Shown: in pieces, positions 16,441 to 44,402 of the stretch
Layout: every line of letters starts with the position of its first letter
How positions within the stretch are numbered: the first letter of the stretch is position 1
Source: Takakia lepidozioides
Taxonomy: Eukaryota; Plantae; Bryophyta
Reading direction: 5' to 3'
DNA: 64,000 nt
NCBI GenBank assembly: GCA_030704615.1
Contig: CM060731.1
Coordinates: 81,530,001 to 81,594,000, forward strand
Notes under the pieces: model-generated
Seen by the model: the letters and a program-made list of their open reading frames with translations, nothing else
What the model was told of the DNA's origin: nothing
The model's database searches: none
Translations under genes and position numbers: made by a program

Positions 16441-17257
16441 CATACCAAAACTGGATTGCTTGAGCTTCAGTAACCCCTTGGGTCACACTTATCAAGCGCC
16501 TCATACGAGTGTACGCCTCTCGCAGGCTCTCACTGGGTTTGCGCTGGAAGTCTTGCAAACTTCGCAGCTTCTCTGTCTGTACACCTTGGTAGTTCCTCCG
16601 CAACTCCTGGAAGAACTCCACCAATGGGTTGAATCTAGGCACATGTATTGTAGTCGTGGCAGGATGAGTAGTAGCACCTTTTGAACTGGTACCACCTACA
16701 GAAGTACCAGCACTACTTGCTCCACTACTAGTGCTGGCAGTGGGAGATATTGGTGCTGATGCAGCTACTGGTCGCGTCGTGCCTCGAGTAATGGAGACGT
16801 AGTCAGGTGACCAATACATCCTCCACTCCTCAATCTCTGCTTCATGTCCTCGCCTGAACTCGTGGTAATCGTCCATAGGCGGGCCTTTCCAATGCTAGAA
16901 CAGTCCCTTCCACGCCATGAATGGGGTGAATAGCTGTGGATTGCGCATCTGCTGCAAATCACACCAGCTGTCGAACTCCTGGATAAAGTCATCCAGCTCA
17001 ATTGTGCCCACAACTCCAGAGTACCTACGAGGCCCCTTGGTAGCTCCATACATCTCCTCCATGTCGTCCCACAACAATGGCGAATGAAAGTGCACACATG
17101 TTGATGAAGCCTCCGAGTCTGTGTCTGACTCTACAGTAATTGAGGGTGGCGGTGAAGGTGGTCTGAACCGAATACCTCGTCTTGTGAACCCACTCTCACT
17201 GTTACTGCCTATAGCCGTACTCCCCTCAAAAACCCTTGGGTAACTCCGTAATGACAC
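16441..17257 (-). pseudogene. gag N-terminal part, fused to RNase H by an internal deletion
   Basis: Near-identical to 32835-33650 (LDDFIQEFDSWC...FQRKPSESLREAYTRMRRL). It jumps from AIQFWY directly into RNase H sequence. Confidence 0.8.
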
Positions 17258-18850
17258 TCACAATGTGCACCTCCTCCACGTGACACTATAAGGCTCTAGT
17301 ACTAATCTAATAGTGACACAGGTGGGCACCTGTTGCAGTTTAAGGGTCATATCCCAATGGCTCAGGGCACTTGCACCTGCATCCACCGCAAGAACTCCTA
17401 TGGTTGGCTGGTCATCAACCCAGCCTCACCATAGAAGAAACACTGGTGGTCTTGCTGGTCATCACTCCAGCCTCACCACCGACAGCATACTCTAGGATTG
17501 ACCAGTGATCAAATCGGCCTAATCCCTATGAAAGCAAGCGCCCACACAAAAACCAACATGGCGCACAGTCAAGCATGCAGGTGTTGGGGGCGATCCAAAC
17601 ACAAGAAATCAAAAACATCAACACCCCCACACCAAAATCCAGCTGCAATGCTGATCCTGCAGAATAGCCCAGCCCAAAACCCCGGACTGACTGGCCTCCA
17701 CCAAGAGAGGCTTTGGCAACTATAAGTACTAGGTAATGAAAATAGTACAGAGATGGAGGGGAAGAATAGAAGCCCGACCAAGCAAGATCTAATCCTGATC
17801 TATGCTATCAACTGCCAGACTTCTCTCAAAGTGCCTCGCTCTGCATGATGGTAAGGTGTAGGAGGTATATCTATGTCCAGAAACCTGCCACTAACCTTGT
17901 CCCAAGCTACAGTAGCTCGCTCTAAACCAACCCTCCTCCTCTTTCTGCCAGGTAGAGACAAAGCAATACTCCCCTATCTCCCGCTCACTGAACACTAAAG
18001 AAAACAAAGGTAGGGTCTGATAGTCTCTCAACTCGAAAGCTTTGAGACGGTTGCGAGTGTCCTCATTGCGAATGACTCCATCTCCTTCACGCACAACAAA
18101 CATGTCATTGCAAATGAACCCCCGCTCGTGGTTGCCCTGTGTAGAGCGTGTCCGGCTGCAACGCTGTCTGATTGCACAAACTTGTGTAGCTCCTGCTCCT
18201 CTGCTCCAGTACACCCACGGCCTTGGCTGAACACCTTGGTACCCGGGGCTGTCTTTGGCTGTGTTCCAAGCCTAGCTTTCACCCACTTGGTATTTCACTT
18301 ACAGCTGCAGAACTGCTGGCTCCAACAGAGTTCTGACTGTCCAAGGCGATATTGAGGCCCTCAATGCCAACTACAGCAGTCTGTTATCTACTGCTAATGC
18401 CTGACTCCCAGTATGCAATCAACTCTTCCAACTGTTCTCCACTCAAATCAGTCTGAGTTCCTTGGGAAACATAAATCCTGTCCCCTTGTGTGCACAGGCT
18501 AAGAGAAGAGATCTGCCCTTCAATTACGTCCTCATTTCCCCCAGCCATACAAGGAGTACATCCACAGATTTGTCTCTCATATAGACCAGCACAGGTTCTA
18601 GAAACAGAATTGTGGATCTTTCATGACACACTCACACCTCTAAAAAATTCCATAGATTTTTAGCAGAGTCCTAAAACAAAAATCAGGTCTAGATAGGTAG
18701 ATTTCCCCTTTCTGCAGCTATCCCCTCAAAAACTGAGTCAAACAGAGCCCATTTGACAAAGATATGACCATCTTCAGCCGCAGCGTGCAGGCCCAGTTCG
18801 AGGAAGAGGAGCAATAACGCAGGAGCAGATCCGCCATCGCCAGAGCTCAA

Positions 18851-18940
18851 ATGCCCCCGCCATCGGAGAAGATTCACAGGCTAGTTGATGAAATCTCCAG
18901 CCTCACTCTACTTGAAGTTTCGGATCTCACAACGCTGTTG
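18851..18940 (+). pseudogene. captured fragment of organellar ribosomal protein L7/L12 (bL12) N-terminal domain
   Basis: PPSEKIHRLVDEISSLTLLEVSDLTTLL. Confidence 0.8.
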
Positions 18941-19954
18941 AACTCAAATGAAATGGAGGGGAACAGCAGGCACATGGCCAGGGAACCTAGGAAACCATAT
19001 AGAAACTTAGGGAACCGGGAACCAGTTACCAGATATTTTGGGTGTAACTTTAAATTTTAAACTTGAAAACTTATTATAAAAAAAAAAAAAAAAAAACCCT
19101 TTGATCTAATTTAAATGATTTAGAGCCAAATTGGCTTGCAACAGTGAGCGGTAGCAGGACGAGGCAAGAACTGACTCATAGCAGGGAGCTCCCTTGCTCT
19201 GCAATGGGCCCCATCTTCTTTGCCTCCCGCTCTTTTCATGTGCCTGCTCACCTCCCTCTCAGTGCAGCATTCCTTCTAATGCCACCCGCAGTGCTCGCAA
19301 TTTCATGTTGCCACCAATACAGGGAAGTGCCACCAATCCCGAGCTTATTCTGTCTTCCTTGAAAAGCCTGTTGGCCTATCTCAATCTTCTCATGTACTTA
19401 GCTTTTCTATCACAGTACTTGCCAGTTCACCTCCATGGCTGTGACCCTGCTCTCAAACAGTATATAAACATACATAAACTGTGCATCACACAGGCAGTCC
19501 TAAGGCTCTGTATTCTCTACACCTTTTAGCCTGTGACCACCTTCTTGGCAACAATCCAGGCTCTAGGATCTAACCTGCAACATGAGTGTGCAAAAGAACC
19601 GTTGTGATGCACACTCATCCAAAGAGTTCTGCTCCAGCTCAATACTCCATGCCCATTTGCTCTCACTCCTTACGGGCCGTCAAGTGGTCTTGGATAGAAA
19701 ACTCCCAGCTATCAAGACTTTATGGAGTAATATGAAATGCGACAGTCACCAGTATGACTGTGTTGAGCGCACCGATACATTAAAACGCTTACTGAAATGC
19801 TGCTTTTCGCTTTTTTGGCAGCCTTCTTGGCCATTCGAGAACCTTTGTCTGCAAGAAGAATGGAAGCAAAACACATGTGTGTCTGCTCTTCACCCTCTCC
19901 AAGATCTGCCACATGAAAGCCTTGTTTTACCAGACCTGTGTAGGGAGGCTCTTG

Positions 19955-20147
19955 CAAGGCCTGCATCCCTCAAGACTTCATCTATTGCAACATCATCATT
20001 CCATGCCACCTCAGGAATCACTTTGTTAAAATGACGTTGAATCTTCGTGACGTTTCGCTCATCTTGATCTGTGAGCAACAAATTGAAAGCAACACCTTTG
20101 CGACCAAACCGCCCGCTTCGACCGATTCGGTGCAGATATGTCTCAGG
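19955..20147 (-). pseudogene. captured C-terminal fragment of a DEAD-box RNA helicase (DBP5/RH38-like)
   Basis: [24 protein letters not shown]...[15 protein letters not shown]...LRDAGL (motif VI plus C-terminus). Confidence 0.8.
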
Positions 20148-21206
20148 GAGCTCTGTTCCCGAAAGCTTGACTGAACGAGGGAAAGTGGTCCGGTGCAGAA
20201 TCTCAGCGACATCAGCATTCCTCAGAAGTTCGTCTCCTTCATTGTGACCGGAAGTCAAATGCGTTCACATTGGCGAAGGTAACTGGTGCCTTGAACTTCC
20301 AACCCTGCAGCAAATGGCCATTGCGAGAGACAGCAAACAATGCAGACTTGCTGCCCTGCAAATTGGAACTAACTTAAGCCGGGAGAGACCTAATATTGCA
20401 TGGAACGGAAGCCAGTCCCACTCATGCTGGCGGAATATCGCTGGTCACCAAATCCCAGCCAGCGCGGGCCCTTCGCCGGGAGAGAGCAGGAGTAGCTTCA
20501 GATGAAGAAAGCAGTGTCTCGTTATCCCAGATATGAGAGAAATGGCTAATGTTGGCCGCCTCCCATGGGCCCATCGCGCCATCGCGCAGGCAGACAGTTC
20601 AGTGGTCACTACAAGACTCCATCACCAAGACCTTGTGGCCAACTATCAAAGTCTCCAACCTCCACACCTCTTGTTTTTTTTTTTTTTAAACTCACGAGCA
20701 GAGACGACAACTAGATCTGCGCGCACAGCCCATGGCAACAGCAGGGGCCAGATGGACTCCTGCCCCAAGATGTATATTATAATAGTGCTAAAAAAACATT
20801 GTATCTAGCTTAGCATTAAAAACTAGGTAGCATGATCTCTCTCGAGTGATAAGAAAACTAGAAAAACACACTGTTTACACAAGAAAACAACATGAATCCA
20901 ACAGCATCACTCTTTAAGATAATAGTAGTTGAGCCAGGGGCACCCCAAGCTATGGGGACTCCACCCCACAACAACCTACACTCCCATCATGAGTACACTC
21001 AGATCTAAACGCATGCAGGAGTTCGGTCGCACAGGCTCAACTCGAGAGAGATGAGCTACGCGACTGCCGCTCTCGTGAAGATAAGGCCGTTCAGGTGTCA
21101 AACTAAACTTGACACCTGATTTAACACTTGACCTAAATCCAAGTGTTAAATAAAAATAACTAGCTTTATTCTAGTTCTTTTCACACTGTGCTTATTTAAC
21201 TTGACA

Positions 21207-22132: not shown

Positions 22133-23036
22133 TGTCAAATTAAATAAACCATTCTCAGATATAACCACAGGTTGACAAAAATCGTAGCAACATCTCAAGC
22201 CTCATGTTCTGCTCCACTTGGCACACATAGCCAGTCTAATTGCAGGCTCCCTGTGACCAAGCTATATTATAATAATGCTTAAAAACAAAAACTTAATATT
22301 AGCTCAGCACTAGAAAACTAGATAGAGGATCTCTCTCGAGTGATAAGAAAGGACTAAACTCAAATAACAAGAGAAACACAAAACACAACACCATCACTCT
22401 TTAAAATAGTAGTCAATCCAGGGGCACCCCAAGCTATGGGGACTCCACCCCACAACAATACTCAGGTTTTGAACGGTGAAGAAGCTCGGTCGTGCAGGCT
22501 CAACTCGAGAGAGATGAGCCGCACGACTGACGCTCTCGTGAAGATAAGACGGTTCAGGTGTCAAACTAAAATTGACACCTGACTTAACACTTGAACTAAA
22601 TCCAAGTGTTAAATACAAATAACTAGCTTTATTCTAGTTAGTTTCACGCTTGCGCTGGAATCGGACACCGTGCCGCCAAAGCGATCTCGCTGCCGGTCAT
22701 GCGTTGCGGTGTCGTGAACTCCTCGCTTTCTTACATCGATTTAGCTAAAGCCACGTTTCTTATGCCCATAAATGGCTGCATGCCTTCACATCGCAATAAA
22801 GAAAGAGGATAGACAGAAGAGCCGGACGATGCACCGGAGAGCGGTAGCCATGAGGCGGGCTGTGGTGCAAGCTGTTGCTTCCTGCATGAACGCAGGATTT
22901 TCCTCTCCGTGCCAGCAAGGTGATCAAGTGTGAGTAGGCTGTTCGTGCTTCTGCAGCAGGAGTTGGCCACAAGGCCATCCTCCCTTCCATTTGATGAGGG
23001 TGAGGTGGATGGAAGGAGGAGACTATAGCAAGTAGA

Positions 23037-23465
23037 CCATCAAGTGGTCAGTAAGTTGGTTGAGCCGAGTTTCCAGCTCCAGTTCCATTGCTGATAAGGT
23101 GATATGCGCCTCACTTGCCAACGCTATCTTCTCTTCTAGCTCCCTTGCCTTCATCTGACATTGCTCAAGACTTGTACGAAGCTCCAGTTGCTATTGCTGA
23201 AAGGAATCACGTTCAAGTTTATCATGCTGGGCTGACTCTGCCTGAGACTGCAAAGGTTGCCTTAGTGCAAAGTGGAGGCTTGCGATTCTACGTTCCAAAT
23301 CTGACCGGGCAACTTCCATGAAATTTCATCACCATTATCAAACTGGCTGTCCACGGCATCCAGATGCTGGTGCCGTTGCTTCCGTAATGAGCCAGCAGCT
23401 TGCTCGTCGATCTGTTGCAAAAGCTTCTCAGCCACTTTAAGTTTGGAGGAAAGCCATCCCGCCAT
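23037..23465 (-). pseudogene. captured, internally deleted fragments of golgin-84-family (GC2-like) gene
   Basis: MAGWLSSKLKVAEKLLQQIDEQAAGSL joined to the coiled-coil segment ...ELELETRLNQLTDHL. Confidence 0.75.
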
Positions 23466-23529
23466 CTTCCTTGTCTTCCTCAATCTGGTCTCATTGCTCG
23501 CGATGGATTTACAGCTATGCCAGATGACA

Positions 23530-23801
23530 TCCTTCTTTAGGTGTGATCGGTGAACTGAAGCTGAGGGCTGGTTCATCTTCTTAGTTTTGGTGGTGGCAAG
23601 CACAACTGATAGACCCTCACCAGCTGAGGCAACAGCCACTGTCTTCTTGTTGGCAAGCCCTGAATATTTGAACGTGTTCAAGTTATACAAATTGTTCGGC
23701 TCAGAGCTGAATGTCACAGATGCATTGCCATTGCCGTTCCTCGTCACCAAAAACTTGTTGCTGTTCTTTACCAACAACCAGATCAGGTCCGAAGACGCCA
23801 T
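23530..23801 (-). pseudogene. RPL28: captured uninterrupted 5' fragment of 60S ribosomal protein L28
   Basis: MASSDLIWLLVKNSNKFLV...FSSEPNNLYNLNTFKYSGLANKKTV. Confidence 0.9.
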
Positions 23802-23904
23802 CCTTCGACCCGAGGAGGGGATCCCGCTCCAACAAAATGGACGGCTGCAGCGAAATGCAATGAGCACGAAAGAGACATCCTTCTCACTAATGGAACAAGT
23901 CCTG

Positions 23905-24197
23905 GGGTGCGTTTGCTGGAGTTTCTGGCGACTATGCCATCGTCGTGTCTCACAACCCTGACAGCGGCACTACTCGCATTAAGTTGCCGTCTGGAGCAAA
24001 GAAGGTTGTACCAAGCGGATGCCGAGCAATGGTAGGGCAGGTTGTTGGAGGGGGCCAAACAAAGAAGCCTATGCTGAATGCAGGTAATGCGTATCACAAG
24101 TACAAGGTGAAGCGCAACAGCTGGCCTAAGGTGCGGGGTGTGGCCATGAACCCTGTTGAGCATCCCCACGGAGGTGGTAACCATCAGCACATTGGAG
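23905..24197 (+). pseudogene. RPL8: captured internal fragment of 60S ribosomal protein L8 (uL2)
   Basis: [13 protein letters not shown]...KLPSGAKK...[25 protein letters not shown]. Confidence 0.92.
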
Positions 24198-25057
24198 CCC
24201 GCCAGAAAGCCCGACTTGCACAGAGACGAGCAGGAGACTCCCGCTGCAACCTGCATTGAGACAGCCGCCATAGCTCCTAAAGCCAATCCTTCAGCTTTGT
24301 ACGCCCGCTCTTGCCGCCCTCTCAGACTGTCGAAGCCCTTTGCCTTGAGGGTAGGGGGTCGGGACACATGAGGGGCTGCCCCTGTGGTGGGGGCAGTGGC
24401 AGCGATAGGTACGGGGGGCTGAAGCACCCTTGAGTGCCCAAGGCACTCAAGGAGGCGGAGGTGCTCACTAGGTGGAGCCCTGCACACCGGGATGCGGTGG
24501 GGGTGGCTTCACAAAGGGGTGGTGGTAGCTTAGCGGGACTTAGTGAGGGTGGCATAGGACTTACCTTGGGGCGGAGACCTCATGGTGGGAGTCGTGGGGA
24601 GTCTTGGGACTCATCACGGTCCATAGGGGCCGTGGTGGGTGGGCCAAGACTCACCGTGACTCATCACCGGGAGTCGAGGGTTTTCGTGGTGGTTCGCCAT
24701 AAAATGGCATGGTTGTTTGTGAAACCCCCCGCGGACAGCTACAGAAGTATATTTAGGGAGTAGTAACCTCGAGAACGGTGCAAGCCCGTTGGTGACCAAA
24801 AACTAGTGAGTAAGCGAGCGAGCCGGAAAGCGACCAAAGAGTGGGGAGCTGTTCCAGACTGCCAACTACCAAAGGGAATTCCCGCTGGGCCCAAATCGGT
24901 GGAGGGTTCTTTGGGAGATCAAAGGGGGACCGTTATGCCCCGGTGAGCAGCCGAAGCTCCAAGTTGGCCCGGCGGCCATGTTGGGAGTTAGGCACACGCA
25001 TCAAAGCGAGTAACTATGACTTGAAGGGGAGCTTACCGAAGTGAGGTGCGCGACACT

Positions 25058-25069
25058 TGGTATCAGAGC
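25058..25069 (+). promoter_or_regulatory. primer-binding site, tRNA-iMet
   Basis: TGGTATCAGAGC two bases after the 5' LTR. Confidence 0.9.
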
Positions 25070-25110
25070 TTAGAGTTCAGTACGTGATCGTCCTTGGGAT
25101 TGGCCTCATC

Positions 25111-28100
25111 ATGGGGTCGGGCAAGCCAAAGCGAAAGCGGAACGGCCCAAAAGATGATGATCCCGGTGAGCCCGATGGGGGCGACGTGTCACCGAGGCGG
25201 CCGTTTGAGGAAGCGATGCATGTTTCCGAAAACGAGGCCGCTCAAGGGCGGGAGGAATCTGAGGAGTCGGAGCCCAAGGAATCCTTGAGAGCTCCGACCG
25301 ACCAACATATGCCTCCCATGCCGGCAGCCTTTTGGGAAGGGTTGTTGGCGCAGTTTGGCGGGACGTTGAAAGACGTGTTGAAGGCGGCTAATGCCACTTC
25401 CACTAAGGCAAAGTTTAAGGTGAAGCCTAAGGAACCCGGCACCTTCGAGGGTGTCCAAAATCGGAAGGCACTCAACACCTGGCTCCTGGAGCTAGAGCAG
25501 TACTTCCGGGCGGCCAAGTTGAGTGACGAGGATCGGGTGGAAGTGGCTCCCACCTATTTGAGGGGCTATGCTCAACAATGGTGGCAGAAACGCCTTCACG
25601 ACCGAGGTCCAAGCCCGGAAACCTTGAACTGGATGGGTTCAAGGAATTGATGAAGAGACAGTTTGTGCCCCTCAACGCGTCCTGGCTTGCCCGGGACAAG
25701 ATGAGGAATTTGAAGCAAACAGATGACATTCGGGGATATGTCCAGGCTTTCAATGAGCTTTTGCTCGAAGTCGCGGACATGGCAGAACTAGAAATGGTCT
25801 TCAACTTTGTGGCGGGACTGGCCCCATGGGCCAGGCGGAAGTTGGAGGAGAAGCCACCTAAGACTTTGAACGAGGCAATTGAGAGGGCTGAATGTTTCTC
25901 GGATGTCCCTAGGGGTGAAAGACAAGGCCGTACGGAGCTGAACCACAAGAAGACCCGGCGGGAAGGTGAAGAAGTGGGATAGGCCACGCGGCGACAATGG
26001 CACGTGGAAATCGAAGGGAGGGCCTTCACACGTCAAGACGGTACCCGGTGCTTCGAAAGGAAAAGCGGGTGGAGCGGCTTATGGCGGACAGAAGACCACC
26101 TTTGATGGAGTGTGTTTCAATTGCGGGGAGCTCGGGCACATGGCCAAGAAGTGCACAAAACCTCGACAATTGAACATGACTCGGGCAACCACGGAGCTGT
26201 CAGAAGATACCATCAGTCGCTTGGTGGAAGCGGTGGTCGCCACGACTTGCAACGTAGGCAACTATTCTTGTGAGTTGTATCAGGAAACTGGCGCCCTACG
26301 TAAAGGGAGTCAGTTATTGTTTGTGGATGGGATAATATCCGGAACTAATGTGTCGTTGTTGGTGGACACAGGAGGGTCGCACTCCTTCATGACGCCGGCG
26401 GCGGCGCAAAAGTTGGGACTCTCGACAAGTGACGTGGGGGCCTCTATTGAGGTGCATTCTGCCAAAAAAGAACCACAACTGGTGACAAGGTTGGCATTTG
26501 ACGTTCCTCTTCAACTGGGGAGTTGGGGATGACCTTTTTGAGCAAATCCGGAGCGGTCATAGATGGCCGCAAGGGAGTAGTCACACTGCCATGTGGGAAT
26601 GGTGGCGAGGTCTTACGAGTGTCAGAAACGCCCAAACCCGTGGGAGGGCGAATAAGCCTTCTGTCAGCAAGGGAGTGGGCCGTGGAGGAGGCACACGAGC
26701 CCCAGTTTTTGCTCTACATTAGAGAAGTGAAGGGGAAAGGCGATGGGGAGCCGAGCCCAGATTGGATCAAGGGGATTTTGGAGAAATACCAGGATGTGAT
26801 GCCGGAGGATTTACCAAGCGGTTTGCCACCGCGAAGAGGAGTTGACCACAAGATTGAGGTGATACCGGGATCAGAACCGCCTGCCAAGGCGCCCTACCGG
26901 TTGAGCCACAGAGAGTTGGTCGAGCTGAAGACTCAGCTCAAAGATCTAATGTCAAAGGGGTACATCCGGCCGAGTAAGTCACCTTACGGAGCCCCGGTGC
27001 TATTTGCAGATAAAAAGGATGGGACGCTGCGGATGTGTGTCGATTACAGGGCTCTGAATAAGGTGACTATCAAAAACCGGTACCCTTTGCCAAGGATCGA
27101 CGACCTCTTCGATCGGTTGGCAGGAGCGAAGTATTTCAACCGGATCGACTTGCGCTCCGGCTATCATCAAATTCGGGTGGCGGAAGGGAGAGGAGAAAGA
27201 CGCGTGCAGGACAAGGTATGGTTCATATGAGTTCTTGGTGATGCCTTTTGGGCTCACCAATGCACCAGCGACATTTAGCACGCTGATGAACAGCCTTTTT
27301 CAGGATGGTTAGATGACTTTTGTGATCGTGTACATCGACGACATCTTGGTGTACTCGAAAACGAAGGAGGAGCACTTGGAGCACCTGAAAAGGGTGTTCC
27401 AAAAATTGCGGGAAGGGAAGCTATACGCCAAAGCTTCAAAGTGCGAATTCGGGGTCACGAAAGTGGGTTCTTGGGGCATGTGATTACACAGGATGGGATC
27501 AAAATGGATGACAGAAAGGTGAGGGCGATCTTGGACTGGGAGCCTCCGACTTTGGTCCCGGGAGTGCGATCCTTCCTAGGACTCGCCTCCTATTACCGGA
27601 AGTATGTGAGAAATTTCGCCAAGATCGCGGGGCCGCTGTCGGACCTTCTGTGTAAATCCAAAGTCTGGGTATGGAACACCTTTTGTGGCCAAGCTTTTGC
27701 TGAATTGAAGCAGCGGATGGCGGAAGCTCCAGTCTTGAAAATCCCGGAGTTCGATCGTCCATTCGAGATTCATACGGATGCGTCGGACTTCGCGATTGGG
27801 GGTGTACTTATGCAAGATGGACGTCCAGTGGCTTACGAAAGTAAGAAACTAAATGAAGTGGAGCGACGGTGGCCAACGCACGAAAAAAAAGAGATGAAGG
27901 CGGTGGTGCATTGCCTTGAGCTTTGGCGCCACTATGTTGGTTCCAACCCAGTGAAGGTATTCACGGACAATGTTACGGTGAAGTATTTTGCCACGCAGCC
28001 CAAGTTGTCCCCAAAACAACTTAGGTGGCAAGATACTTTGGCAGTGTTTGACGTGGATATCCAGTACAAACCGGGACGTGACAATGTGGTGGCCGATGCT

Positions 28101-29560
28101 TTAAGTAGAAAGCAGCAGCTCATGTTGGTGTACAGGGGCGAGACGGCGCTCCAAAGGAAGATCCGGAAGGCTTTCCGGAAGGATGAGCTGGCGAAGTCTG
28201 TGATGCAAGACTTGAGGAGGGGGGTTAAATCGCAGTTTCCACTTGCAAAATGGACTGCTCCGGTATAAGCAAAAGCGTCTCTACGTGCCGAAGGGAGGGA
28301 TCAGAGATAGTCTCTTGAGAGAATGCCATGATAGCCCGCTTGCGGGCCACGGCGGAGCCAAGCGCACTGCGGCACTCTTGAAGAAAGAGTATTTCTGGCC
28401 CAAACTGAGGGAGGAGGCAGAGGAGTATGTCAAGACATGCACCACATGCAACAAAACCGGAGCGAGTACAAAAAGCAAGCGGGGCTGTTACAACCCTTGC
28501 CGATTCCAGAGGGGACTTGGGAAAGCGTCTCGATGGATTTCATGACTGCTATGTCGCTGTCAAAAGGATTCGATGCAATCATGGTGGTGGTGGTGGATAG
28601 GTTCAGTAAAATGGGCCATTTCATCCCACCAAGGAGACGGCAACGGCGCAGGAGGACAAGGCGACTTTACTTCGCCCACGTCTTAAAGCATCATGGAGTC
28701 CCGAAGGATATTGTCTCGGACCGCGATCCAAAGTTTACGAGTAAATTTTGGATGACACTTTGGAAGAAGATGGGGACGAGGCTGAAGATGAGCACCGCCT
28801 TCCGACCTACGACCGACGGCCAAACGGAAAGAGTGAATTCCGTAGTGAAGCAGATCTTGCGGAATTACGTGTCGGCAGACCAATCAGACTGGGTGGAACA
28901 CTTAGACGCGGTAGAGTTCTGTTATAATAACACAGAACACTCCGCAACGGGAGTTTCCCTTTCGTATTGGTCTATGGAAAAGCACCTCTGGTGCCGACAA
29001 GTTGGGCCGCCCAGGACGTTGAGAGGAAACCGGGTAGCGGCGGTACTGGAAGAACGTGAGCGTTTGTTGAAGCTCGCAAAGTACAACATTGCCAAAGCTA
29101 GGAAACCGTATGAAAGGCAGGCGAATCAGAAGCGGAGGGGAAGTGAAGTTTGAGGCAGGCACAGAGGTCTGGTTTGAACATCAAGAATTTCCGACTACCT
29201 CCGGAAGTGAGTCCAAAGTTCGTACCTCCGTATGCGGAACCCTTTCGCATCTGGAAGGTTATGAATGAGGATGTGTATGAATTGGAGCTGCGGCAAACAG
29301 CAAGGTGCATCCAGTATTCCACGTCTCCCTTTTGAAGCCTTACTTCAAAGATGAAGCGCGTCCGAATCGGCATCAAGTGTTGCGTCCGCCACCTGTGCTG
29401 TTGGATCATGAAAATGAACGTGAGTACGAGGTGGAGGCAGTACTTAAGTCAAGGAGGTTCAAGAACCGAGAAACGGAGTATCTCGTCAAATGGAAGGGCT
29501 ATCATCATGTGGAGGCATCTTGGGTGCGTGCCTCAGAAATGGAAACGCATCCGAGGCGGT
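25111..29560 (+). pseudogene. gag-pol: gag, CCHC knuckle, protease, RT, RNase H, integrase, chromodomain; multiple frameshifts
   Basis: CFNCGELGHMAKKC; LLVDTGG; [11 protein letters not shown]; YIDD (~27330); HTDASDFAIGGVL; SDRDPKFTS; TDGQTERVN; YEVEAVL...EYLVKWKGY...SWV. Confidence 0.92.
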
Positions 29561-32500
29561 TGCAGTTTTTGAAGGGCGACCTCAAAGCGGAAGAAGCGTT
29601 GATGGGACATCCCTTGGAGCATGGGGGAGGAAATGCATGCTTAGCCCGGCTTAGCTAGCTTAGGAATCCGATTGCAAAAACTGTATTGTACAAAAAATTT
29701 GTTATAAAGGAAATGGGTTCTAAATGTTGTGCGTCCTATTTTGTTTGGAATGGTGTGATGCATGGTGTGGTTGGCTAGTGTGTAGAATGCATGCTAGCTT
29801 ACAAAAGTGGGAGAGGTAAATTGGGTTAATCGTGTGTGTGTTTACGCAGTGCCGAAATCGGGTGACTCCCATCCAAGGGGCAAGGAAACATGCACCTTCT
29901 TTGGGAGTTCACGTGCTAGTGCGCACCTGGCGCGTGCGCGTACTATAACTACGCTACCGAGGCTATAACTGCGCTACCGAGGTGGTTGCCTTGTAGTAGG
30001 AAGCTACGTGCTTCCGTTCACGTACTATAATCGTGTAGCCTCGGGACGGGAAGTCATAGTGCGGCTTCGACGTGTTCCCGTACCTCAGGCCAGCATTCCA
30101 AGACGGACCCCAATTGTAATGATTGGGGCGCACGGTTGGTTCAAGGTTCTTCCTAGTCAAGGGGGTTCGAGGTGACCCTTGTGCAAGGTAATGCCAAGCG
30201 GCATCATGAGCGATCGCAAACAATGTTGTTGCAGTAAGGCGATTCGATCCTCGGGGAGGATCATTCCTTGGCCTTGAAGTAGGCCAAGAAGAGTGCACTG
30301 GGAGGAGCTTGAGAGGCTCCACCCCTGGCCGGGACTTGGAGGAAGTCGGCCGAACTAGCTAGTGGAGAGTAGAGTCAAGTGTAGGGTTTGGTTCTTGCCA
30401 TGGGACGCCATGGTACGGAAACAAACTCCTTGATGTGGGACGCCACAACTTGGATGTTCGTTTCTACAAAATGGACAAGTCGATGAGGACATCGACTCCC
30501 GTAGGGGGTGTGTGTCGTGGCCTTTGCCTTGAGGGGCAGGGGGTCGGGACACATGAGGGGCTGCCCCTGTGGTGGGGGCAGTGGCAGCGATAGGTACGGG
30601 GGGCTGAAGCACCCTTGAGTGCCCAAGGCACTCAAGGAGGTGGAGGTGCTCACTAGGTGGAGCCCCGCACACCGGGATGCGGTGGGGGGGGCTTCACAAA
30701 AGGGTGGTGGTAGCTTAGCGGGACTTAGGGGGGTGGCATAGGACTCACCTTGGGGCGGAGACCTCGTGGTGGGAGTCGTGGGGAGTCTTGGGACTCATCA
30801 CGGTCCATAGGGGCCGTGGTGGGTGGGCCAAGACTCACCGCAACTCATCACCGGGAGTCGAGGGTTTTCGTGGTGGTTCGCCATAAAATGGCATGGTTGT
30901 TTGTGAAACCCCCGCGGACAACTACAGAAGTATATATAGGGAGTAGTAACCCCGAGAACGGTGCAAGCCCGTTGGTGACCAAAACTAGTAAGTAAGCGAG
31001 CGAGCCCGAAAGCGACCAAAGAGTGGGGAGCTGTTCCGGACTGCCAACTACCAAAGGGAATTCCCGCTGGGCCCAAATCGGTGGAGGGTTCTTTGGGAGA
31101 TCAAAGGGGGACCGTTATGCCCCGGTGAGCAGCCGAAGCTCTAAGTTGGCCCGGCGGCCAGGTTGGGAGTTAGGCGCGCGCATCAAAGCGAGTAACTATG
31201 ACTTGAAGGGGAGCTTACCGAAGTGAGGTACGCGACACAGACGCTGATAAGCATATGTAAACTCCACCTTACACAAAGAGAAAGCATGACCCAGGTGGAG
31301 AAGTCCATTCATGTGAGGATAGGGGAAGTTTCCAAAGAGCTTTTCACCTTCCTTTGAATTTTTAAATTTGAAAGGATAGTTGATAGTTGCAGAAAGGGGA
31401 AATCTACGTATCTAGATCTGGTTTTAATTTTTTGGACTGTGTTAAAAATCTATGGAATTTTTTGAGTGTGAGTGTGCCATGAAAGATCCACAATTCTGTT
31501 TCTAGAACCTGTTGTGGTCTATATGAGAGACAAATCTGTGGATGTCCTCCTTGTATGGCTGGGGGAAATGAGGACGTAATTGAAGGACAAGTCTCTTCTC
31601 TTAGCCTGTGCACACAAGGGGACAAGATTTATGTTTCCCAAGGAACTCAGACTGATTTGAATGGAGAGCAGTTGGGCGAGTTGATTGCATACTGGGAGTC
31701 AGGCATTAGCAGTAGACAACAAACTGTTGTAGTTGGCGTTGAGGGCCTCAATATTACTTTGGACAGTCAGAACTCTGTTAGAGCCAGCAGTTCTACAGCT
31801 GTAGGTGAAATACCAAAGTGGGTGAAAGCTAGGCTTGGAACATAGCCAAAGACAGCCCCAGGGACCAAGGTGTTCAGCCACAAGGCCGTGGTGTATTGGA
31901 GTAGAGGAGCAGAAGCTACACAAGTTTGTGCAATCAGACATGGTTGCAGCCGGACACGCTCTGCACAAGACAAACACGAGCGGGGGTTCATTAGCAATGA
32001 CAAGTTTGTCCTGCTTGAAGGAGATGCAATCATTCGCAATGAGGACACCTGCAACCGTCTCCAAGCTTTCGAGTTGAGAGACTGTCAGACCCTACCTTTT
32101 TTTCTTTAGTGTTCAGTGAGGGAGGGGGGGTATTGCTTGTCTCTACCTGGTAGAAAGAGGAGGAGGGTTGGTTAGAGCGAGCTACTGTAGCTTGGGACAA
32201 GGTTTAGTGGCAGGTTTCTGGACATGATATACCTCCTACACCTTACATCATGCAAAGCGAGGCACTTTGAGAGAAGTCTGGCAGTTGATAGCATAGATCA
32301 GGATTAGATCTTGCTTGGTCGGGCTTCTATTCTTCCCTCCCTCTCTTTACTATTTTCATTACTTTGTACTTGTAGTTGCCAAAGCCTCTTTTGGTGGAGG
32401 CCAGTCAGTCCGGGGTTTTGGGCTGGGATATTCTGCAGTATCAGCATTGCAGATGGATTTTGGTGTGGGGGTGTTGATGTTTTGATTCTTGTGTTTGGAT

Positions 32501-32834
32501 CCCCCCCCAACACCTGCATGCTTACTGTGCGCCATGTTGGTTTTTGTGGGCGCTTGCTTTCATAGGATTAGGCCGGATTTGATCACCGGTCAATCCTAGA
32601 GTATGCTGTCATTGGTGAGGCTAGAGTGTGACCAGCAAGACCACCAGTGTTTCTTCTATGGTGAGACTGGGTTGATGACCAGCCAACCATAGGAGTTCTT
32701 GCGATGGATGCAGGTACAGGTGCCCTGAGCCACTGGGATATATGACCCTTAAACTGCACAGGTGCCCACCGTGTCACTATTAGAATTAGTACTAGAGCCT
32801 CATAGTGTCACGTGGGGGAGGTGCACATTGTGAG

Positions 32835-34330
32835 TGTCATCACGAGTTACCCAAGGGTTTTGAGGGGAGTATGGCTACAGGCAATAATAGTGAGAGTGGG
32901 TTCACAAGACGAGGTATTCGGTTCAGACCACCTTCACCTCCACCCTAAACTAGTGCAGAATCAGACACAGACTCGGAGGCTTCATCAACAGGGTGTGCAG
33001 TTTCATTCGCCATTGTTGTGGGACGACATGGAGGAGATGTATGGAGCTACCAAGGGGCCTCGTAGGTACTCTGGAGTTGTGGGCACAATTGAGCTGGATG
33101 ACTTTATCCAGGAGTTCGACAGCTGGTGTGATTTGCAGCAGATGCGCAATCCACAGCTATTCACCCCATTCATGGCGTGGAAGGGACTGTTCTAGCATTT
33201 GGAAGGCCCGCCTATGGGACGATTACCACGAGTTCAGGCGAGGACATGAAGCAGAGATTGAGGAGTGGAGGATGTATTGGTCACCTGACTACGTCTCCAT
33301 TACTCGAGGCACGACGCGACCAGTAGCTGCATCAGCACCAATATCTCCCACTGCCAGCACTAGTAGTGGAACAAGTAGTGCCGGTACTTTTGCAGGTGGT
33401 ACTAGTTCAAAAGGTGCTACTACTCCTCCTGCCACGACTACAACACATGTGCCTACATTCAACCCGGTGGTGGAGTTCTTCCAGGAGTTGCGGAGGAACT
33501 ATCAAGGTGTACGGACAGAGAAGCTGCGAAGTTTGTAAGACTTCCAGCGCAAACCCAGTGAGAGCCTGCGAGAGGCGTACACTCGTATGAGGCGCTTGAT
33601 AAGTGTGACCAAGGGGGTTACTGAAGCTCAGGCAATCCAGTTCTGGTATGGAATTTTGGACAAGGAGCTCAGGAGAAGGGTGCGGGATGCAACCCTGTTA
33701 CAAGCAGCCCAACCCACATTAGCAGATGTGTTTCTGCTGGCTGAGCGGATTGAGTCAACATGGTGGAGGAACGAGTTGTTACCATTGGATTTGGCAAAGA
33801 CATGCTGCACGAGGCGCAGCTGCCAGCCCACAGGCACAAGGGACTGCCCAACAGCGTGGTCAGGGGGGCAAGGTTTCCCAACCCAAATTTCATGGAGCTT
33901 ACATGGGACCTCAGGTGCAGAGGCAGGCAGTAGCATCTTTTGCAAGCCAACAGCAACCAGGGGTGATATGTTGGACATGTGGAGGACCCCATGTCAAGAG
34001 AGATTTTCCCAGAGAGTGGCAAAAGGCCGGCACAAGCACAGCCTACACAGTTGCAGTGTGGCATTGTGGCAATATGGGCATGGAGATGCCCAGTGTTTAT
34101 GACTTGCATCCTGAGTTGCGCCCAGGCCAGTTCCAAGGGAACAATGGTGGCCGGGGGCGAGGGGGACCAGCCCAGAGAGGACGAGGTGGCCGGGCACGAG
34201 GTGCAGGCCAAGGGCAAGCTCAACATGGCCAAGGACGCGAAGGTTAGGGTATTGACCAAGGCATGGCCAACCGGCTTCAGCAGCTAGAGCAGAGGCTCGC
34301 TGCCATGGCTACAGCTCAAGTGGTACCGGC
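32835..34330 (+). pseudogene. gag with two CCHC-like zinc knuckles, disrupted
   Basis: FQRKPSESLREAYTRM (retrotrans_gag-like); CWTCGGPH; CGHCG-like...GHGDAQC; RGG-rich tail. Confidence 0.75.
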
Positions 34331-34759
34331 TCCCAGGCGGAATGGTCCACCTCCTGCTCCTGAGGGAGGAGATATGGGAGGCATGGGATTCATGTGCGGA
34401 GCAGCACTACCACTAGAGCAGGTGGAGTCTGCTGCAGCCGTTGCCAACACTAGCCGCCTTTACAGCTGCAGTTAGTTGGCCTGGAGAGTTGGTGGAAGGC
34501 AATGCCCATGCAGAGGATGTGCCACCTTCAGCAGAGCAAAATGACATGCATGGTACGGTGGAGTTGCCTGCCATGGTTGCTCACACTCCATTGTGGGGTA
34601 CGAGCAAGGATTTGCAGCAGGCTGCTGATGGACGGGTGCAACAAGCCTGGGTAGAGGCCTTCGTACTGTCAGGAGAAGAAAAGAGTGCGGTGATTGCACC
34701 AGGACCGCCTCAGTTGTCGCCATTGGATACCACACTTCTTGTGTGGCAGTGCCCGGATG

Positions 34760-35710
34760 AAGGCATATGCCTTCTAGACTTGTTTGGCGAGATCAGCACT
34801 GGATTGGCTGCAGTGCTGCAGGCAGGTGTACGAGTTCGACGTTACCTGTATGTGGAGAGGGATGAGACTACACGACGCGTCTCACTATGCCATGTTGCTC
34901 AGTTGGTACAGCAGTACCCTGATTTGTTACCAGTGTCTGCAGTTCGTGGATACCAACAAGCCTTGCCAGCAGACATTTCGTTGCTGGGGGGCATTTGGAG
35001 CAACATGGTTGGGATCCATTGATCTGGTAGTGGCAGGTTGGCCCTGCCAAGGCATTCATCAGCGGGCATGGCAATGGATTGCGAGACTCGAGGACGGGTC
35101 TGTTTTGGGAGATGGTGCGGGTTTTGCGCCATTTGCAGCTTCATCAAGCTATATCTCCAGCATACATCTTAGAGAATGTGCCACTGATGGGCGATTCTCG
35201 GGCCAGGGTGATGGCCAGTGTGCATCAAGTCCGGTCATGGCTTGGGTCAGCAGTGTTGCTGGATGCAGCTGCAGTGGGGTCACGGGCTCATCGTCCACGG
35301 CTATGGTGGACTAACTTGATGCCACCTGCACTGCTCAAGCGTGCATTTGATGGGGTGCAGCGGCTAGCACACCTCACAGTGGATAGCATTTGGACACAGA
35401 AAGGCAGTCTCAAACGGTGAGATACGATGACCGTTCACCTTTGGCAGTGGTCAACAGGGTGGGTCAACCGCGAGCAGCATTACCTACACTGCTCAGCTTC
35501 CCAGGATCCCATGCTTTTCGGGATGGTGGACCTGGCCTCTTGTGGGATAGCCAATTGCAACAATTAGTGGAGCCCAATGCTGACGAGCGCGGGCGATGGG
35601 TTTTTACCACTGGTACCACGGTGGTGCCATCTCTTTCTGAGGCATCACGTCGTCAGGTTTTGGGGCAAGCAATGGATCTCAATTGTTTGACCTGGATTAT
35701 CAGCTTGGCT
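34760..35710 (+). pseudogene. C5-cytosine DNA methyltransferase domain (DNMT3-like) inside the retroelement polyprotein, frameshifted
   Basis: Motif I LLDLFGEISTG, II YVERD, IV DLVVAGWPCQG, VI YILENV, VIII AHRPRLWWTNL and X RQVLGQAMD, in the canonical order. Confidence 0.9.
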
Positions 35711-36129
35711 ATGGCTGAACAACGCAGAGTACACTTCCCTTCATGGTCTCCCTGCCTACCGAGACGGTACAGGCAACAAGTGGGGGCGAGCAGGTGAGGA
35801 CACGCGTGCAGGCCGCATCCATGGCACACGTGGGAGGTGCTCGAGGTTCAGAATGAGGTTGGCAGCCAAGGCAGCAGTGATGGATCAGGTTGGGGATTTT
35901 TCTCGGTTGAGGAGGTCTCAAGGATGGGGATGATGGGGGGGCAGGGTGAGACATTGTCACTGATAGAGGAGGCAGTGGTCATTGCTCAAGAGGTTGCAGC
36001 ATAGCAACCACGGGACGCGTCTTCTACCTCTAAGCCTGCTGGACTCAAGGTTGCAGTCACGGAGGACAACTGGGAACCTGATGTTGGACCTATAGTCACC
36101 GGAGGAGAGAGACGACGTATACGGCGGTT

Positions 36130-38990: not shown

Positions 38991-38992
38991 AG

Positions 38993-39137
38993 GTGCATGT
39001 TGTGTGGGTCTGCTAGAGGGGCAGCCACCATGCTGGTGTGTGATCGATGCTCTAGAGGCTGGCATATGGGATGTTTGACTCCACCTCTTGAGATGGTTCA
39101 TGATGGGGATTGGTTATGTCCGCATTGCATTGGATAG
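38993..39137 (+). other. PHD finger at integrase C-terminus
   Basis: CMLCGSARGAATMLVCDRCSRGWHMGCLTPPLEMVHDGDWLCPHC is a C4HC3 pattern. Confidence 0.92.
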
Positions 39138-39919
39138 TGGGAGTGGATACAACCATGGAAGGCTAACAAGAAATGCAAGGCCAAGCTACTAGGAGACCTT
39201 GAACACACGAGATCCTGGCTCAAGTTCACAGATTGCAAGACGGCGACTAACGATGGGGCTACTCTTGTACCCGGCCTCTTGGTCTATAGAGTTTGAGTAC
39301 AATAGGGACAGTGATAGAGGACTTAGTACGGCTGTGGCTATTACATCTTGTAGCTATCTGGAGTTAGAGGGACCTATCCACCAGCTAGGGGGCGATTGTG
39401 GCAGACTACTTTATTGTGCATATATGCGTGGTGTGGTTTGGACAACGATGTAGTTGTGTAGCGATATGTATGTGCACGACAGCTGTCAAGTTAAATAAAC
39501 ACAGTGTGAAACTAACTAGAATAAAGCTAGTTATTTATATTTAACACTTGGATTTAGTTCAAGTGTTAAGTCAGGTGTCAAGTTTAGTTTGACACCTGAA
39601 CCGTCTTATCTTCACGAGAGCGTCAGTCGTGCGGCTCATATCTCTCGAGTTGAGCCTGCACGACCGAGCTCCTTCACCGTTCAGAACCTGAGTGTGCTTA
39701 TGAAGGGAGGATAGGTTGTTGTGGGGTGGAGTCCCCATAGCTTGGGGTGCCCCTGGCTTGACTAATATTTTAAAGAGTGATGGTGTTGTGTTTTGTGTTT
39801 CTCTTGTTATTTGAGTTTAGTCCTTTCTTATCATTGTGGCAGACTACTTTATTGTGCATATATGCGTGGTGTGGTTTGGACAGCGATGTAGTTGTGTAGC
39901 GATATGTATGCGCACGACA

Positions 39920-44205: not shown

Positions 44206-44402
44206 GTATCGACCCTTCATCAACAATTTTTTCAGTCGTTCGTTGCATCAAGTTTTTCGCGTTTTTTGGTCTAAACAGACACTAAACTTAGAGTTTTTTG
44301 CGTGCAGGCCACTTCTTGGCACGTTATTCCCACCATTGTCGTCCGCTAGAGACAAATTCGGTGCCGGTTATCCATCCATGAGGTGAACCGAATTTTCCTG
44401 CA

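What the first reader, a model, noticed from the sequence alone, without database searches (positions are those of the whole stretch)
22651..24327. Cargo region of copy 2: a different set of captured gene fragments in mixed orientation
Seen: GC2-like (two joined pieces), RPL28 (5' UTR plus ~90 codons), RPL8 and a transit-peptide-like start ([25 protein letters not shown], 24271-24198) abut one another at the same position as the copy 1 cargo. Three are antisense to the element. Inference: a dedicated acquisition hotspot biased to abundant transcripts, possibly an anti-silencing decoy or a source of antisense RNA. The mixed orientation argues against simple sense template switching alone.
Basis: partly seen in the sequence, partly recalled or inferred. 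Interest (0 to 1): 0.8.

Follow-up and report, generated by a model that had tools for sequence, protein, structure and literature searches.

The report
Host mRNA mosaic in retrotransposon leader
A dead jumping gene in a moss-like plant genome carries, just behind its first end repeat, a 1.9-kb patchwork of spliced pieces of at least five host messenger RNAs, mostly backwards; this is most likely a by-product of sloppy copying during its replication, not a device with a purpose.

Summary
Window 22651-24327, plus 31243-31381 beyond a younger nested chromovirus, is a chain of host gene pieces:
- golgin candidate 2 (residues 1-41 joined to about 450-540)
- RPL28 (5' UTR plus codons 1-92)
- RPL8/uL2 (residues 124-220)
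- a 25-codon transit-peptide-like start

Four donors are antisense to the element and RPL8 is sense.

The chain lies inside a near-TSD-bounded Ty3/gypsy element (22133-39919; gag-DNMT-RT-RH-IN-PHD, self-priming PBS). It starts about 135 nt after the 5' repeat. The neighbouring copy holds an unrelated 2-kb mosaic in the same slot, with poly(A) tails in both orientations. The right boundary is the same nucleotide in both copies.

The RPL28 piece lacks an intron that Marchantia and Riccia have, so the source was spliced mRNA.

At least 25 related elements from other mosses have compact leaders with no cargo. The slot is therefore specific to this genome's family.

Best reading: non-homologous template switching by reverse transcriptase onto co-packaged mRNAs, during minus-strand synthesis for sense pieces and plus-strand synthesis for antisense pieces. 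The hotspot claim is supported. The abundance bias is untested, and the decoy or antisense-RNA function has no support.

The scan has noted similar mosaics in at least eight other windows of this genome.

This is a variant of known LTR-retrotransposon gene capture (Bs1 type).

The parts
22133..22149 (+). First 17 nt of the 5' terminal repeat (A1) of carrier copy 2. The 5' flank reads TCGG and the 3' flank reads TCGA.
   Evidence: 16/17 match to the start of A. It lies directly next to the inverted block, which lacks exactly these bases. Flanks read.
22150..22650 (-). Inverted block: A nt 21-350, the self-priming PBS (CTCGAGAGAGAT), conserved leader L1 (about 135 nt), and the first roughly 56 nt of cargo.
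   Evidence: 91% match to A2 (39503-39833) in reverse orientation. Alignment with the copy 1 A1 and leader. PBS complementarity.
22651..23037 (.). Unidentified cargo piece or pieces (387 nt).
   Evidence: No Pfam hit. No match to copy 1 or to the rest of the window.
23038..23316 (-). Golgin candidate 2 coiled-coil piece (about residues 450-540 of a 685-aa homologue).
   Evidence: tblastn of GC2 proteins, E 2e-15 to 1e-6.
23343..23528 (-). Golgin candidate 2 start: at most 63 nt of 5' UTR (23466-23528) plus residues 1-41 (23343-23465).
   Evidence: Hits start at residue 1 of proteins named golgin candidate 2.
23529..23890 (-). RPL28 (eL28): 5' UTR plus codons 1-92, with no intron.
   Evidence: Pfam E 9e-21. 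Alignments. Marchantia and Riccia genes have an intron inside this stretch.
23906..24196 (+). RPL8 (uL2) residues 124-220, the only piece in sense to the element.
   Evidence: Pfam E 9e-30. Solved-structure search.
24197..24313 (-). Transit-peptide-like start (25 codons, 24197-24271) plus about 40 nt of upstream leader.
   Evidence: Reading frame. Too short for a homology test.
24314..24327 (-). End of the LeuRS piece (RLRG), cut off from the rest by the chromovirus insertion.
   Evidence: Read by eye across the target-site duplication CAGAC.
24328..31237 (+). Nested younger chromovirus. It is not part of the cargo. LTRs are 96.5% identical, it has a tRNA-Met-type PBS, and the TSD CAGAC lies at 24323-24327 and 31238-31242.
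31243..31381 (-). Cytosolic leucyl-tRNA synthetase piece (HIGH-motif region, about residues 54-91). This is the last cargo piece before the conserved leader.
   Evidence: Solved-structure search E 5.5e-10. Boundary alignment.
31382..39919 (+). Rest of carrier copy 2: conserved leader L2, then gag, DNMT, RT, RNase H, integrase, PHD, PPT and B1-A2-B2.
18723..20711 (-). Same slot in copy 1, holding an unrelated mosaic: DBP5/DDX19-like C-terminus (sense), L7/L12 N-domain (antisense), A16 at 20672-20687 and T23 at 19078-19100.

Best explanation
The stretch is passenger sequence. It was picked up by an LTR retrotransposon while the element was being reverse transcribed, not after it landed.

The carrier is a Ty3/gypsy element (gag-DNMT-RT-RNase H-integrase-PHD) with termini A1...B1-A2-B2 and a Tf1-like self-priming site right after A1. 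About 135 nt downstream of that site, reverse transcriptase left the element's template, copied short runs (about 100-370 nt) of spliced host mRNAs packaged in the same particle, jumped from one to the next, and finally rejoined the element at the start of the conserved leader L2.

Pieces in sense to the element (RPL8 here, the DBP5-like piece in copy 1) fit jumps during minus-strand synthesis on RNA. Pieces antisense to the element (GC2, RPL28, the transit-peptide gene, LeuRS) fit jumps during plus-strand synthesis, when the enzyme swaps the minus-strand DNA for an mRNA and runs towards that mRNA's 5' end. That would explain why three antisense pieces carry their 5' UTR on the gag-proximal side, and why GC2 shows an internal skip in the same order and orientation.

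Shown: host origin, spliced state, position inside a near-TSD-bounded element, the shared slot boundaries, and the absence of cargo in relatives. Inferred: the timing (during replication), the strand assignment of the jumps, and the lack of function.
For: - Host origin of five donors.
- RNA origin: the RPL28 piece runs uninterrupted over codons 1-92, whereas the Marchantia and Riccia genes have an intron near codon 48 and another at the start. Cargo 1 holds an A16 tract and a T23 tract next to 3'-UTR-like sequence.
- The antisense RPL28 piece is spliced, so it came from sense mRNA and was turned at the cDNA level.
- The cargo lies inside complete insertions: copy 1 has the 4-bp TSD AACT; copy 2 has flanks TCGG/TCGA.
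- Slot: both copies share L1 (about 135 nt) and L2 from one identical nucleotide. The 1.87-kb and 1.99-kb fillings share nothing. Apart from one deletion and one nested element, the copies are collinear at 92-94% identity, so host pieces are confined to the slot.
- mRNA termini lie at junctions: three 5' UTRs in cargo 2 and two poly(A) tails in cargo 1.
- The GC2 pieces (1-41 and about 450-540) are joined in order and in the same orientation, as expected for a skip along one template.
- CpG observed/expected is 0.53-0.61 in the cargo, close to 0.45 in the element body and unlike 0.82 in the younger chromovirus.
- Abnormal template switching between co-packaged RNAs is the accepted route for such captures (review PMC13317346).
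- Scan notes report other mosaics in the same leader in at least eight other windows. Some recur at several loci, which would mean the cargo transposes with the element. These notes are unchecked.
Against: - No copy with this same cargo was seen elsewhere, so capture before insertion is not shown for this copy.
- Exact junctions could not be read because the donor genes of this genome were not available. Microhomology, untemplated bases and a cap-derived G are therefore untested.
- Plus-strand switching onto RNA is my inference. I did not look for, and cannot cite, a documented precedent in LTR retrotransposons.
- A balanced 501-bp inversion at the 5' end of this very copy (22150-22650) shows that DNA-level inversions happened here. 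Some orientations may therefore be secondary.
- The near-constant slot size in the two copies here (1.87 and 1.99 kb; the lengths listed for similar notes elsewhere in this genome are 1.4-2.0 kb, unchecked) is not explained.
Confidence: 0.6

Rival explanations
1. Capture after integration. A recurrent double-strand break or fragile site in the leader of integrated copies was repaired by end joining that patched in cDNA or RNA-templated filler from several mRNAs, in either orientation.
For: - Mixed orientation and many short patches are typical of filler DNA at repaired breaks (general knowledge).
- This copy also carries a balanced inversion right next to the cargo.
- No second locus with this cargo was seen.
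Against: - The same single-nucleotide right boundary and the same left boundary in two independent, near-TSD-bounded copies with unrelated fillings would need the same break twice.
- No host pieces lie elsewhere in 8-13 kb of element.
- Scan notes report identical mosaics at several loci, implying transposition with cargo (unchecked).
Confidence: 0.2
2. Functional module. The family keeps a slot for host mRNA pieces because sense or antisense host sequence in its transcript protects it from silencing or regulates host genes.
For: - The slot is filled in both copies here and, by scan notes, in many others.
- Small RNAs from LTR-captured genes have been proposed to regulate parent genes in rice and sorghum (PMC3726574 abstract).
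Against: - No conservation of content, donor, orientation or reading frame between copies.
- The pieces are CpG-decayed like the dead carrier.
- At least 25 related elements in other mosses work with a compact, cargo-free leader.
- No RNA or small-RNA data.
- By inference, antisense to abundant mRNAs should create dsRNA against the element itself.
Confidence: 0.07
3. Not cargo at all. The pieces are remains of host genes, or of ordinary processed pseudogenes made by LINE machinery, that lie between or were inserted into transposon fragments.
For: - The region is a nest of transposons.
- Cargo 1 has poly(A) tracts.
Against: - Five unrelated genes abut one another within 1.9 kb as intronless part-copies.
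- The chain sits inside an element with matching ends and near-perfect TSD.
- No poly(A) tract of 10 or more bases is visible in the sequence of cargo 2; per-piece target-site duplications were not looked for.
Confidence: 0.05

Closest known systems
Bs1 of maize, an LTR retrotransposon with three transduced host gene fragments
   Same: Several part-copies of unrelated cellular genes sit inside an LTR retrotransposon and are carried along with it (PMC13317346).
   Different: Here there are at least seven pieces from at least five mRNAs, mostly antisense, packed into one slot in the non-coding leader. A second copy has a different filling in the same slot. No hybrid ORF with signs of use was found.
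LTR-retrotransposon-captured genes of rice and sorghum (Jiang and Ramachandran 2013)
   Same: Host gene sequence sits inside full-length LTR elements. Most copies decay, and small RNAs have been suggested (PMC3726574).
   Different: That was a genome-wide survey of sporadic captures. The abstract (the only part I read) does not mention a fixed slot refilled in different lineages of one family.
Abnormal template switching between co-packaged RNAs (Veju, BARE-2; Sabot and Schulman)
   Same: This is the proposed mechanism: reverse transcriptase changes to another RNA in the particle (PMC13317346).
   Different: The known cases insert sequence from another transposon or of unknown origin. Here the donors are spliced host mRNAs, and both strands of synthesis seem to be involved.
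Retroviral oncogene capture, and L1 chimeric retrocopies formed at RNA 5' ends (own knowledge; no paper read here)
   Same: Non-homologous jumps of reverse transcriptase, with junctions at or near template 5' ends. The retroviral 5' leader is a known recombination-prone zone.
   Different: Those are single sense-oriented captures (v-onc) or target-primed events (L1). Neither gives a multi-donor, two-orientation mosaic.
Pack-MULE, Pack-CACTA and Helitron gene capture
   Same: A transposon carries fragments of several host genes.
   Different: Those captures happen at the DNA level, keep introns, and lie between TIRs or Helitron ends. Here the piece that could be tested is spliced, and the carrier is a retroelement.
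KnitGypsy-Dnmt3 of Klebsormidium, and Tf1-type self-priming elements (relatives of the carrier)
   Same: A gypsy element with a DNMT inside pol (PMC5890265). A PBS complementary to the start of R.
   Different: In the passages I searched, that paper says nothing of host cargo in the leader. The termini here are A1...B1-A2-B2.

Membership tests
Host gene fragments transduced by an LTR retrotransposon (Bs1 type) | The sequence lies between the terminal repeats of one element whose ends are flanked by a target-site duplication. | tested here: met
   Copy 2 spans 22133-39919 with flanks TCGG/TCGA (one transition). Copy 1 has a perfect AACT duplication.
Host gene fragments transduced by an LTR retrotransposon (Bs1 type) | The fragments are homologous to cellular genes unrelated to transposon functions. 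| tested here: met
   eL28, uL2, LeuRS and golgin candidate 2.
Host gene fragments transduced by an LTR retrotransposon (Bs1 type) | RNA-mediated origin (introns absent). | tested here: met
   The RPL28 piece lacks the intron near codon 48 that the Marchantia and Riccia genes have. Poly(A) tracts occur in cargo 1. The donor gene of this genome itself was not seen, so the test is by orthologues only.
Host gene fragments transduced by an LTR retrotransposon (Bs1 type) | The same cargo is found in several transposed copies, showing capture preceded transposition. | not testable with these tools
   Other windows of this genome cannot be fetched. Scan notes report shared mosaics elsewhere, but none mentions RPL28 or RPL8.
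LINE-made processed pseudogene or chimeric retrocopy | Each insert ends in a poly(A) tail and has its own target-site duplication. | tested here: not met
   No A or T run of 10 or more bases is visible in the cargo 2 sequence, and the pieces abut directly. Per-piece duplications were not looked for. Cargo 1 has two tracts, but they lie inside the chain.
DNA-level capture (Pack-MULE, Helitron) | TIR or Helitron termini around the cargo, with introns retained. | tested here: not met
   The only inverted copy of the end repeat comes from a local inversion of A1. The RPL28 piece is spliced.
Tf1-type self-priming Ty3/gypsy (carrier) | The bases just after the 5' LTR are complementary to the presumed first bases of the transcript (start of R). 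| tested here: met
   A 12-nt perfect complement to A nt about 154, just before a conserved TTGAGCC. The pair changes on both sides between this genome and Calypogeia (script). In Marchantia the same pairing, with one mismatch, was read by eye from the sequence printed. The transcription start itself is unknown.
Ngaro/PAT-like split-direct-repeat elements (DIRS order) | A1...B1-A2-B2 termini together with a tyrosine recombinase and no target-site duplication. | tested here: not met
   The termini fit. But the element encodes Integrase_H2C2 plus rve and has a 4-bp duplication.

The most novel reading that the evidence does not exclude
In this genome, one self-priming DNMT/PHD gypsy family has a replication weak point about 135 nt past its primer site. 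There, reverse transcriptase repeatedly swaps in runs of packaged host mRNAs on both DNA strands. Each lineage therefore carries its own roughly 2-kb record of host transcripts, and full-length element RNA carries long antisense stretches to housekeeping mRNAs that feed back on silencing of the element or of the donor genes.
Probability: 0.12. Interest if true: 0.75.

Novelty: new variant of a known kind. Interest (0 to 1): 0.42.

Why it matters
Gene capture by LTR retrotransposons is known, but mostly as isolated cases. A family in which the same leader position is refilled with different spliced host mRNA pieces in both orientations would be a natural record of non-homologous template switching. 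It would make three things testable from sequence alone: where reverse transcriptase leaves and rejoins its template, whether plus-strand synthesis can copy mRNAs, and which RNAs are packaged. It also warns annotators that ribosomal-protein and other housekeeping 'pseudogenes' in this genome may be retrotransposon leaders. If the pieces do nothing, this is simply a tidy example of a known process.

Tried and rejected
- The protein-atlas search on the GC2 start gave no usable hit. The exhaustive HMMER search settled its identity.
- Pfam scans of all open stretches of cargo 1 and of the unknown 22651-23037 found only L12_N.
- Pfam scans of the leader regions of related loci L001, L002, L005 and L007 found only a MULE fragment.
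- I first read the inverted repeat copy at 22263-22653 as a third, truncated element, and then as captured element RNA. I dropped both readings once the missing first 17 nt of A were found at 22133-22149 in plus orientation: it is a balanced inversion.
- I first took the sharp shared boundary in the moss loci for a slot boundary. Self-comparison showed it is the start of A1.
- The long leader of Marchantia L001 is an assembly gap of Ns, so it is not informative.
- L030's extra 915 nt begins with TGT and ends with ACA, so it looks like a nested solo LTR, not cargo.
- L008/L009 'upstream ORFs' look like an intron-containing RAD50-like host gene next to the element, not cargo (read by eye, plus an AAA_23 Pfam mark on one upstream ORF).
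- A test for base pairing between L1 and the start of L2, which could have closed the slot, gave z-scores of -0.2 and +0.9.
- The 235-codon open frame across RPL28 and GC2 (23265-23969, minus strand) is not longer than chance allows, given two true coding frames.
Full report
**What surrounds the finding**

The window is a nest of retroelements from a seed-free, moss-like plant. The gag protein's best hits are Marchantia and Calypogeia proteins and contigs from moss-associated metagenomes.

Self-comparison shows two copies of one family in opposite orientation:
- Copy 1 lies on the minus strand at 13801-21206.
- Copy 2 lies on the plus strand and ends at 39919.
- They are 92-94% identical where they align (18722-13800 = 31382-39919).
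- Copy 1 lacks 3.6 kb that copy 2 has at 33650-37294.

Copy 2 encodes gag with a zinc knuckle, a C5 DNA methyltransferase remnant (PF00145, E 5e-4, below Pfam's cut-off), RT, RNase H, Integrase_H2C2, rve and a C-terminal PHD finger. All are broken by stops and frameshifts.

The termini are A1...B1-A2-B2, with A about 350 bp and B about 87 bp. A starts TGTC, B ends GACA, and a PPT-like AGGGGGG precedes B1. The same architecture is present in Calypogeia and in a moss contig.

Copy 1 is flanked by a perfect 4-bp duplication, AACT.

**A nested element splits the cargo**

24328-31237 is a younger chromovirus (gag knuckle, protease, RT, RNase H, rve, chromodomain). Its LTRs are 96.5% identical and it has a tRNA-Met-type PBS. 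Its 5-bp duplication CAGAC lies at 24323-24327 and 31238-31242.

Before that insertion, 24327 was joined to 31243. The cargo of copy 2 is therefore 22651-24327 plus 31243-31381.

**Where copy 2 begins**

The copy of A at 22341-22650 is in the wrong orientation for a plus-strand element. It lacks A's first 20 or so bases. Those bases (16 of 17 matching) stand in plus orientation at 22133-22149, directly next to the far end of the inverted block.

So copy 2 starts at 22133. The block 22150-22650 (A nt 21-350, the PBS, leader L1 and about 56 nt more) is a balanced inversion. The flanks are TCGG on the 5' side and TCGA on the 3' side, one transition apart.

Copy 1 sits 926 bp upstream, head to head, as a separate insertion.

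**The observation**

In window order:

| Coordinates | Strand | Piece | Evidence |
|---|---|---|---|
| 22651-23037 | ? | unidentified | |
| 23038-23316 | minus | golgin candidate 2, residues about 450-540 of 685 | |
| 23343-23465 | minus | golgin candidate 2 residues 1-41, with at most 63 nt of 5' UTR |; hits are named golgin candidate 2 in Nymphaea, Cuscuta, Erigeron and Saponaria |
| 23529-23801 | minus | RPL28 codons 1-92, with up to about 100 nt of 5' UTR | |
| 23906-24196 | plus | uL2/RPL8 residues 124-220 | |
| 24197-24271 | minus | 25-codon Met-Ala-Ala, Ser-rich start with about 40 nt of leader; untestable | |
| about 24314-24327 and 31243-31381 | minus | cytosolic LeuRS, about residues 54-95; new here |; last four residues read by eye |

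About three quarters of the 1.87 kb is thus recognisable mRNA sequence. Four donors are antisense to the element and one is sense.

**RNA origin**

The Marchantia and Riccia RPL28 genes were fetched. Both have an intron near codon 48 and another at the very start of the coding region. The cargo piece runs through both positions without interruption.

This rests on orthologues, because the donor gene of this genome could not be fetched.

In copy 1's slot, an A16 tract (20672-20687, sense) and a T23 tract (19078-19100, antisense) sit next to UTR-like sequence. These look like poly(A) tails captured in both orientations.

Because the antisense RPL28 piece is spliced, it cannot come from antisense or read-through transcription of the gene. 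It was made from sense mRNA and turned at the cDNA level.

**The slot**

After A1, both copies share the 12-nt PBS and about 135 nt of leader (L1). They then diverge completely and become alignable again at one nucleotide, 31382 = 18722. Between those boundaries lie 1.87 kb in copy 2 and 1.99 kb in copy 1, with no similarity at DNA or protein level.

Copy 1's filling holds a DBP5/DDX19-like helicase C-terminus in sense and an L7/L12 N-domain in antisense. The rest is unidentified.

Nowhere else in the 8-13 kb elements is host sequence inserted.

CpG observed/expected in the cargos (0.53, 0.61) is close to that of the element bodies (0.44-0.45). It is unlike the younger chromovirus (0.82). This fits long joint residence under methylation.

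**Relatives**

A scan of metagenome contigs with a gag profile returned 80 loci from moss-associated samples.

- In at least 25 of them, the start of A1 lies 1.86-2.25 kb upstream of the same gag residue. In the window copies that distance is 4.49 kb (copy 2, without the chromovirus) and 4.65 kb (copy 1).
- The pairs I compared in one cluster of these loci align collinearly from A1 into gag, apart from small indels. The one outlier (L030) has an extra 915 nt that looks like a nested solo LTR.
- A Marchantia locus is uninformative because of an assembly gap.
- Two Calypogeia copies differ upstream of a shared leader, but no host gene could be recognised there.

So a filled slot is not a feature of the clade. 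It belongs to this genome's family.

Notes from other windows of the same genome describe similar 1.4-2.0-kb mosaics in the leader of the DNMT element, with other donors (LUC7/MAD1/ISD11/RPS18; THI1/ClpP5/RPS7). Some are at more than one locus, and one follow-up called its case clear but ordinary. None mentions RPL28 or RPL8. These notes are unchecked leads.

**Mechanism**

The carrier seems to prime itself. The 12 bases after A1 are the exact complement of A nt about 154, just before a conserved TTGAGCC. The pairing is kept through changes on both sides in Calypogeia (script). In Marchantia it is kept with one mismatch, read by eye from the sequence printed. This is what Tf1-type elements do.

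The slot lies about 135 nt beyond this site. The most economical account is forced copy choice in the particle (review PMC13317346).

- Sense pieces arise when minus-strand synthesis leaves the element RNA for a packaged mRNA and returns.
- Antisense pieces arise when plus-strand synthesis, just after the second strand transfer, leaves the minus-strand DNA for an mRNA, runs to its 5' end, hops to the next, and rejoins at L2.

This predicts what is seen in copy 2. Read in the direction of plus-strand synthesis, the chain runs: GC2 coiled coil, a skip to the GC2 start and its 5' UTR, RPL28 codon 92 to its 5' UTR, the transit-peptide gene codon 25 to its 5' UTR, and then LeuRS. Three of the antisense pieces end at a 5' UTR on the gag-proximal side.

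The strand assignment is inference. Later local inversions, of which this copy has one, could also flip pieces.

Repair of a recurrent break after integration is the main rival. The identical boundaries in two independent copies argue against it.

Nothing supports a function. Content, orientation and frame are not conserved, the carriers are dead, and antisense to abundant mRNAs would be a liability for the element.

**Comparison and verdict**

This is gene capture by an LTR retrotransposon, as in Bs1 of maize and the rice and sorghum surveys. It differs from those cases in three ways:
- the number and shortness of the pieces;
- the two orientations;
- confinement to one leader position that is filled differently in different copies.

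I file it as a new variant of a known kind, of moderate interest.

**Limits of this analysis**

Noticed in passing
window 22133-22650: Balanced inversion at the 5' end of copy 2. A nt 1-17 are in place, while A nt 21-350 plus the PBS, L1 and about 56 nt are flipped. Almost no sequence was lost.
   Followed up: partly
window 20835-20846 and 21041-21052; 22329-22340; L002 about 5733-5744; L001 about 5150-5165: The 12 nt after the 5' repeat are the complement of a site about 154 nt into the repeat, just before a conserved TTGAGCC. The pair changes on both sides between this genome and Calypogeia (script); in Marchantia the same pairing, with one mismatch, was read by eye. This points to Tf1-like self-priming.
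   Followed up: partly
window 13802-13888 vs 14243-14329; 13888-14238 vs 20847-21206: In copy 1 the two B repeats are 100% identical over 87 bp, while A1 and A2 are only 93% identical. Copy 2 gives 97.7% for B and 91.5% for A. The B pair seems homogenised, or is made differently from the A pair. Unexplained.
   Followed up: no
window 24328-31237: Nested chromovirus with LTRs 96.5% identical, a tRNA-Met-type PBS and the TSD CAGAC. It is inserted inside the captured LeuRS piece. An 89%-identical partial LTR of the same family lies inverted at 1446-1997.
   Followed up: yes
window 16441-16442: Copy 1 has a 3.64-kb internal deletion relative to copy 2 (33650-37294). It removes the end of gag, the DNMT, the protease, RT and part of RNase H.
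   Followed up: partly
window 31368-31388: At the junction of the LeuRS piece with the conserved leader, the 7-mer GATAGTT occurs twice in tandem. This may be a footprint of the jump back to the element.
   Followed up: no
window 23265-23969 (minus strand): A 235-codon open frame runs through the RPL28 5' UTR, RPL28 codons 1-92, a linker and the GC2 start. By a rough estimate it is not beyond chance.
   Followed up: partly
window 43410-45040: Arrays of 96-bp and 53-bp tandem repeats, arranged as two inverted blocks (43410-44206 against 44615-44933).
   Followed up: no
L008 1-5850 and L009 (moss metagenome contigs): What looks like an intron-containing RAD50-like host gene lies next to a family member (read by eye; one upstream ORF carries an AAA_23 Pfam mark). 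This shows that these 'metagenome' contigs are moss nuclear DNA.
   Followed up: no
L002 1-19510 (Calypogeia fissa): Two family members lie head to head, as in this window. The plus-strand one has no detectable 5' repeat within 3.4 kb. The family may tend to insert near or into its own kind.
   Followed up: partly
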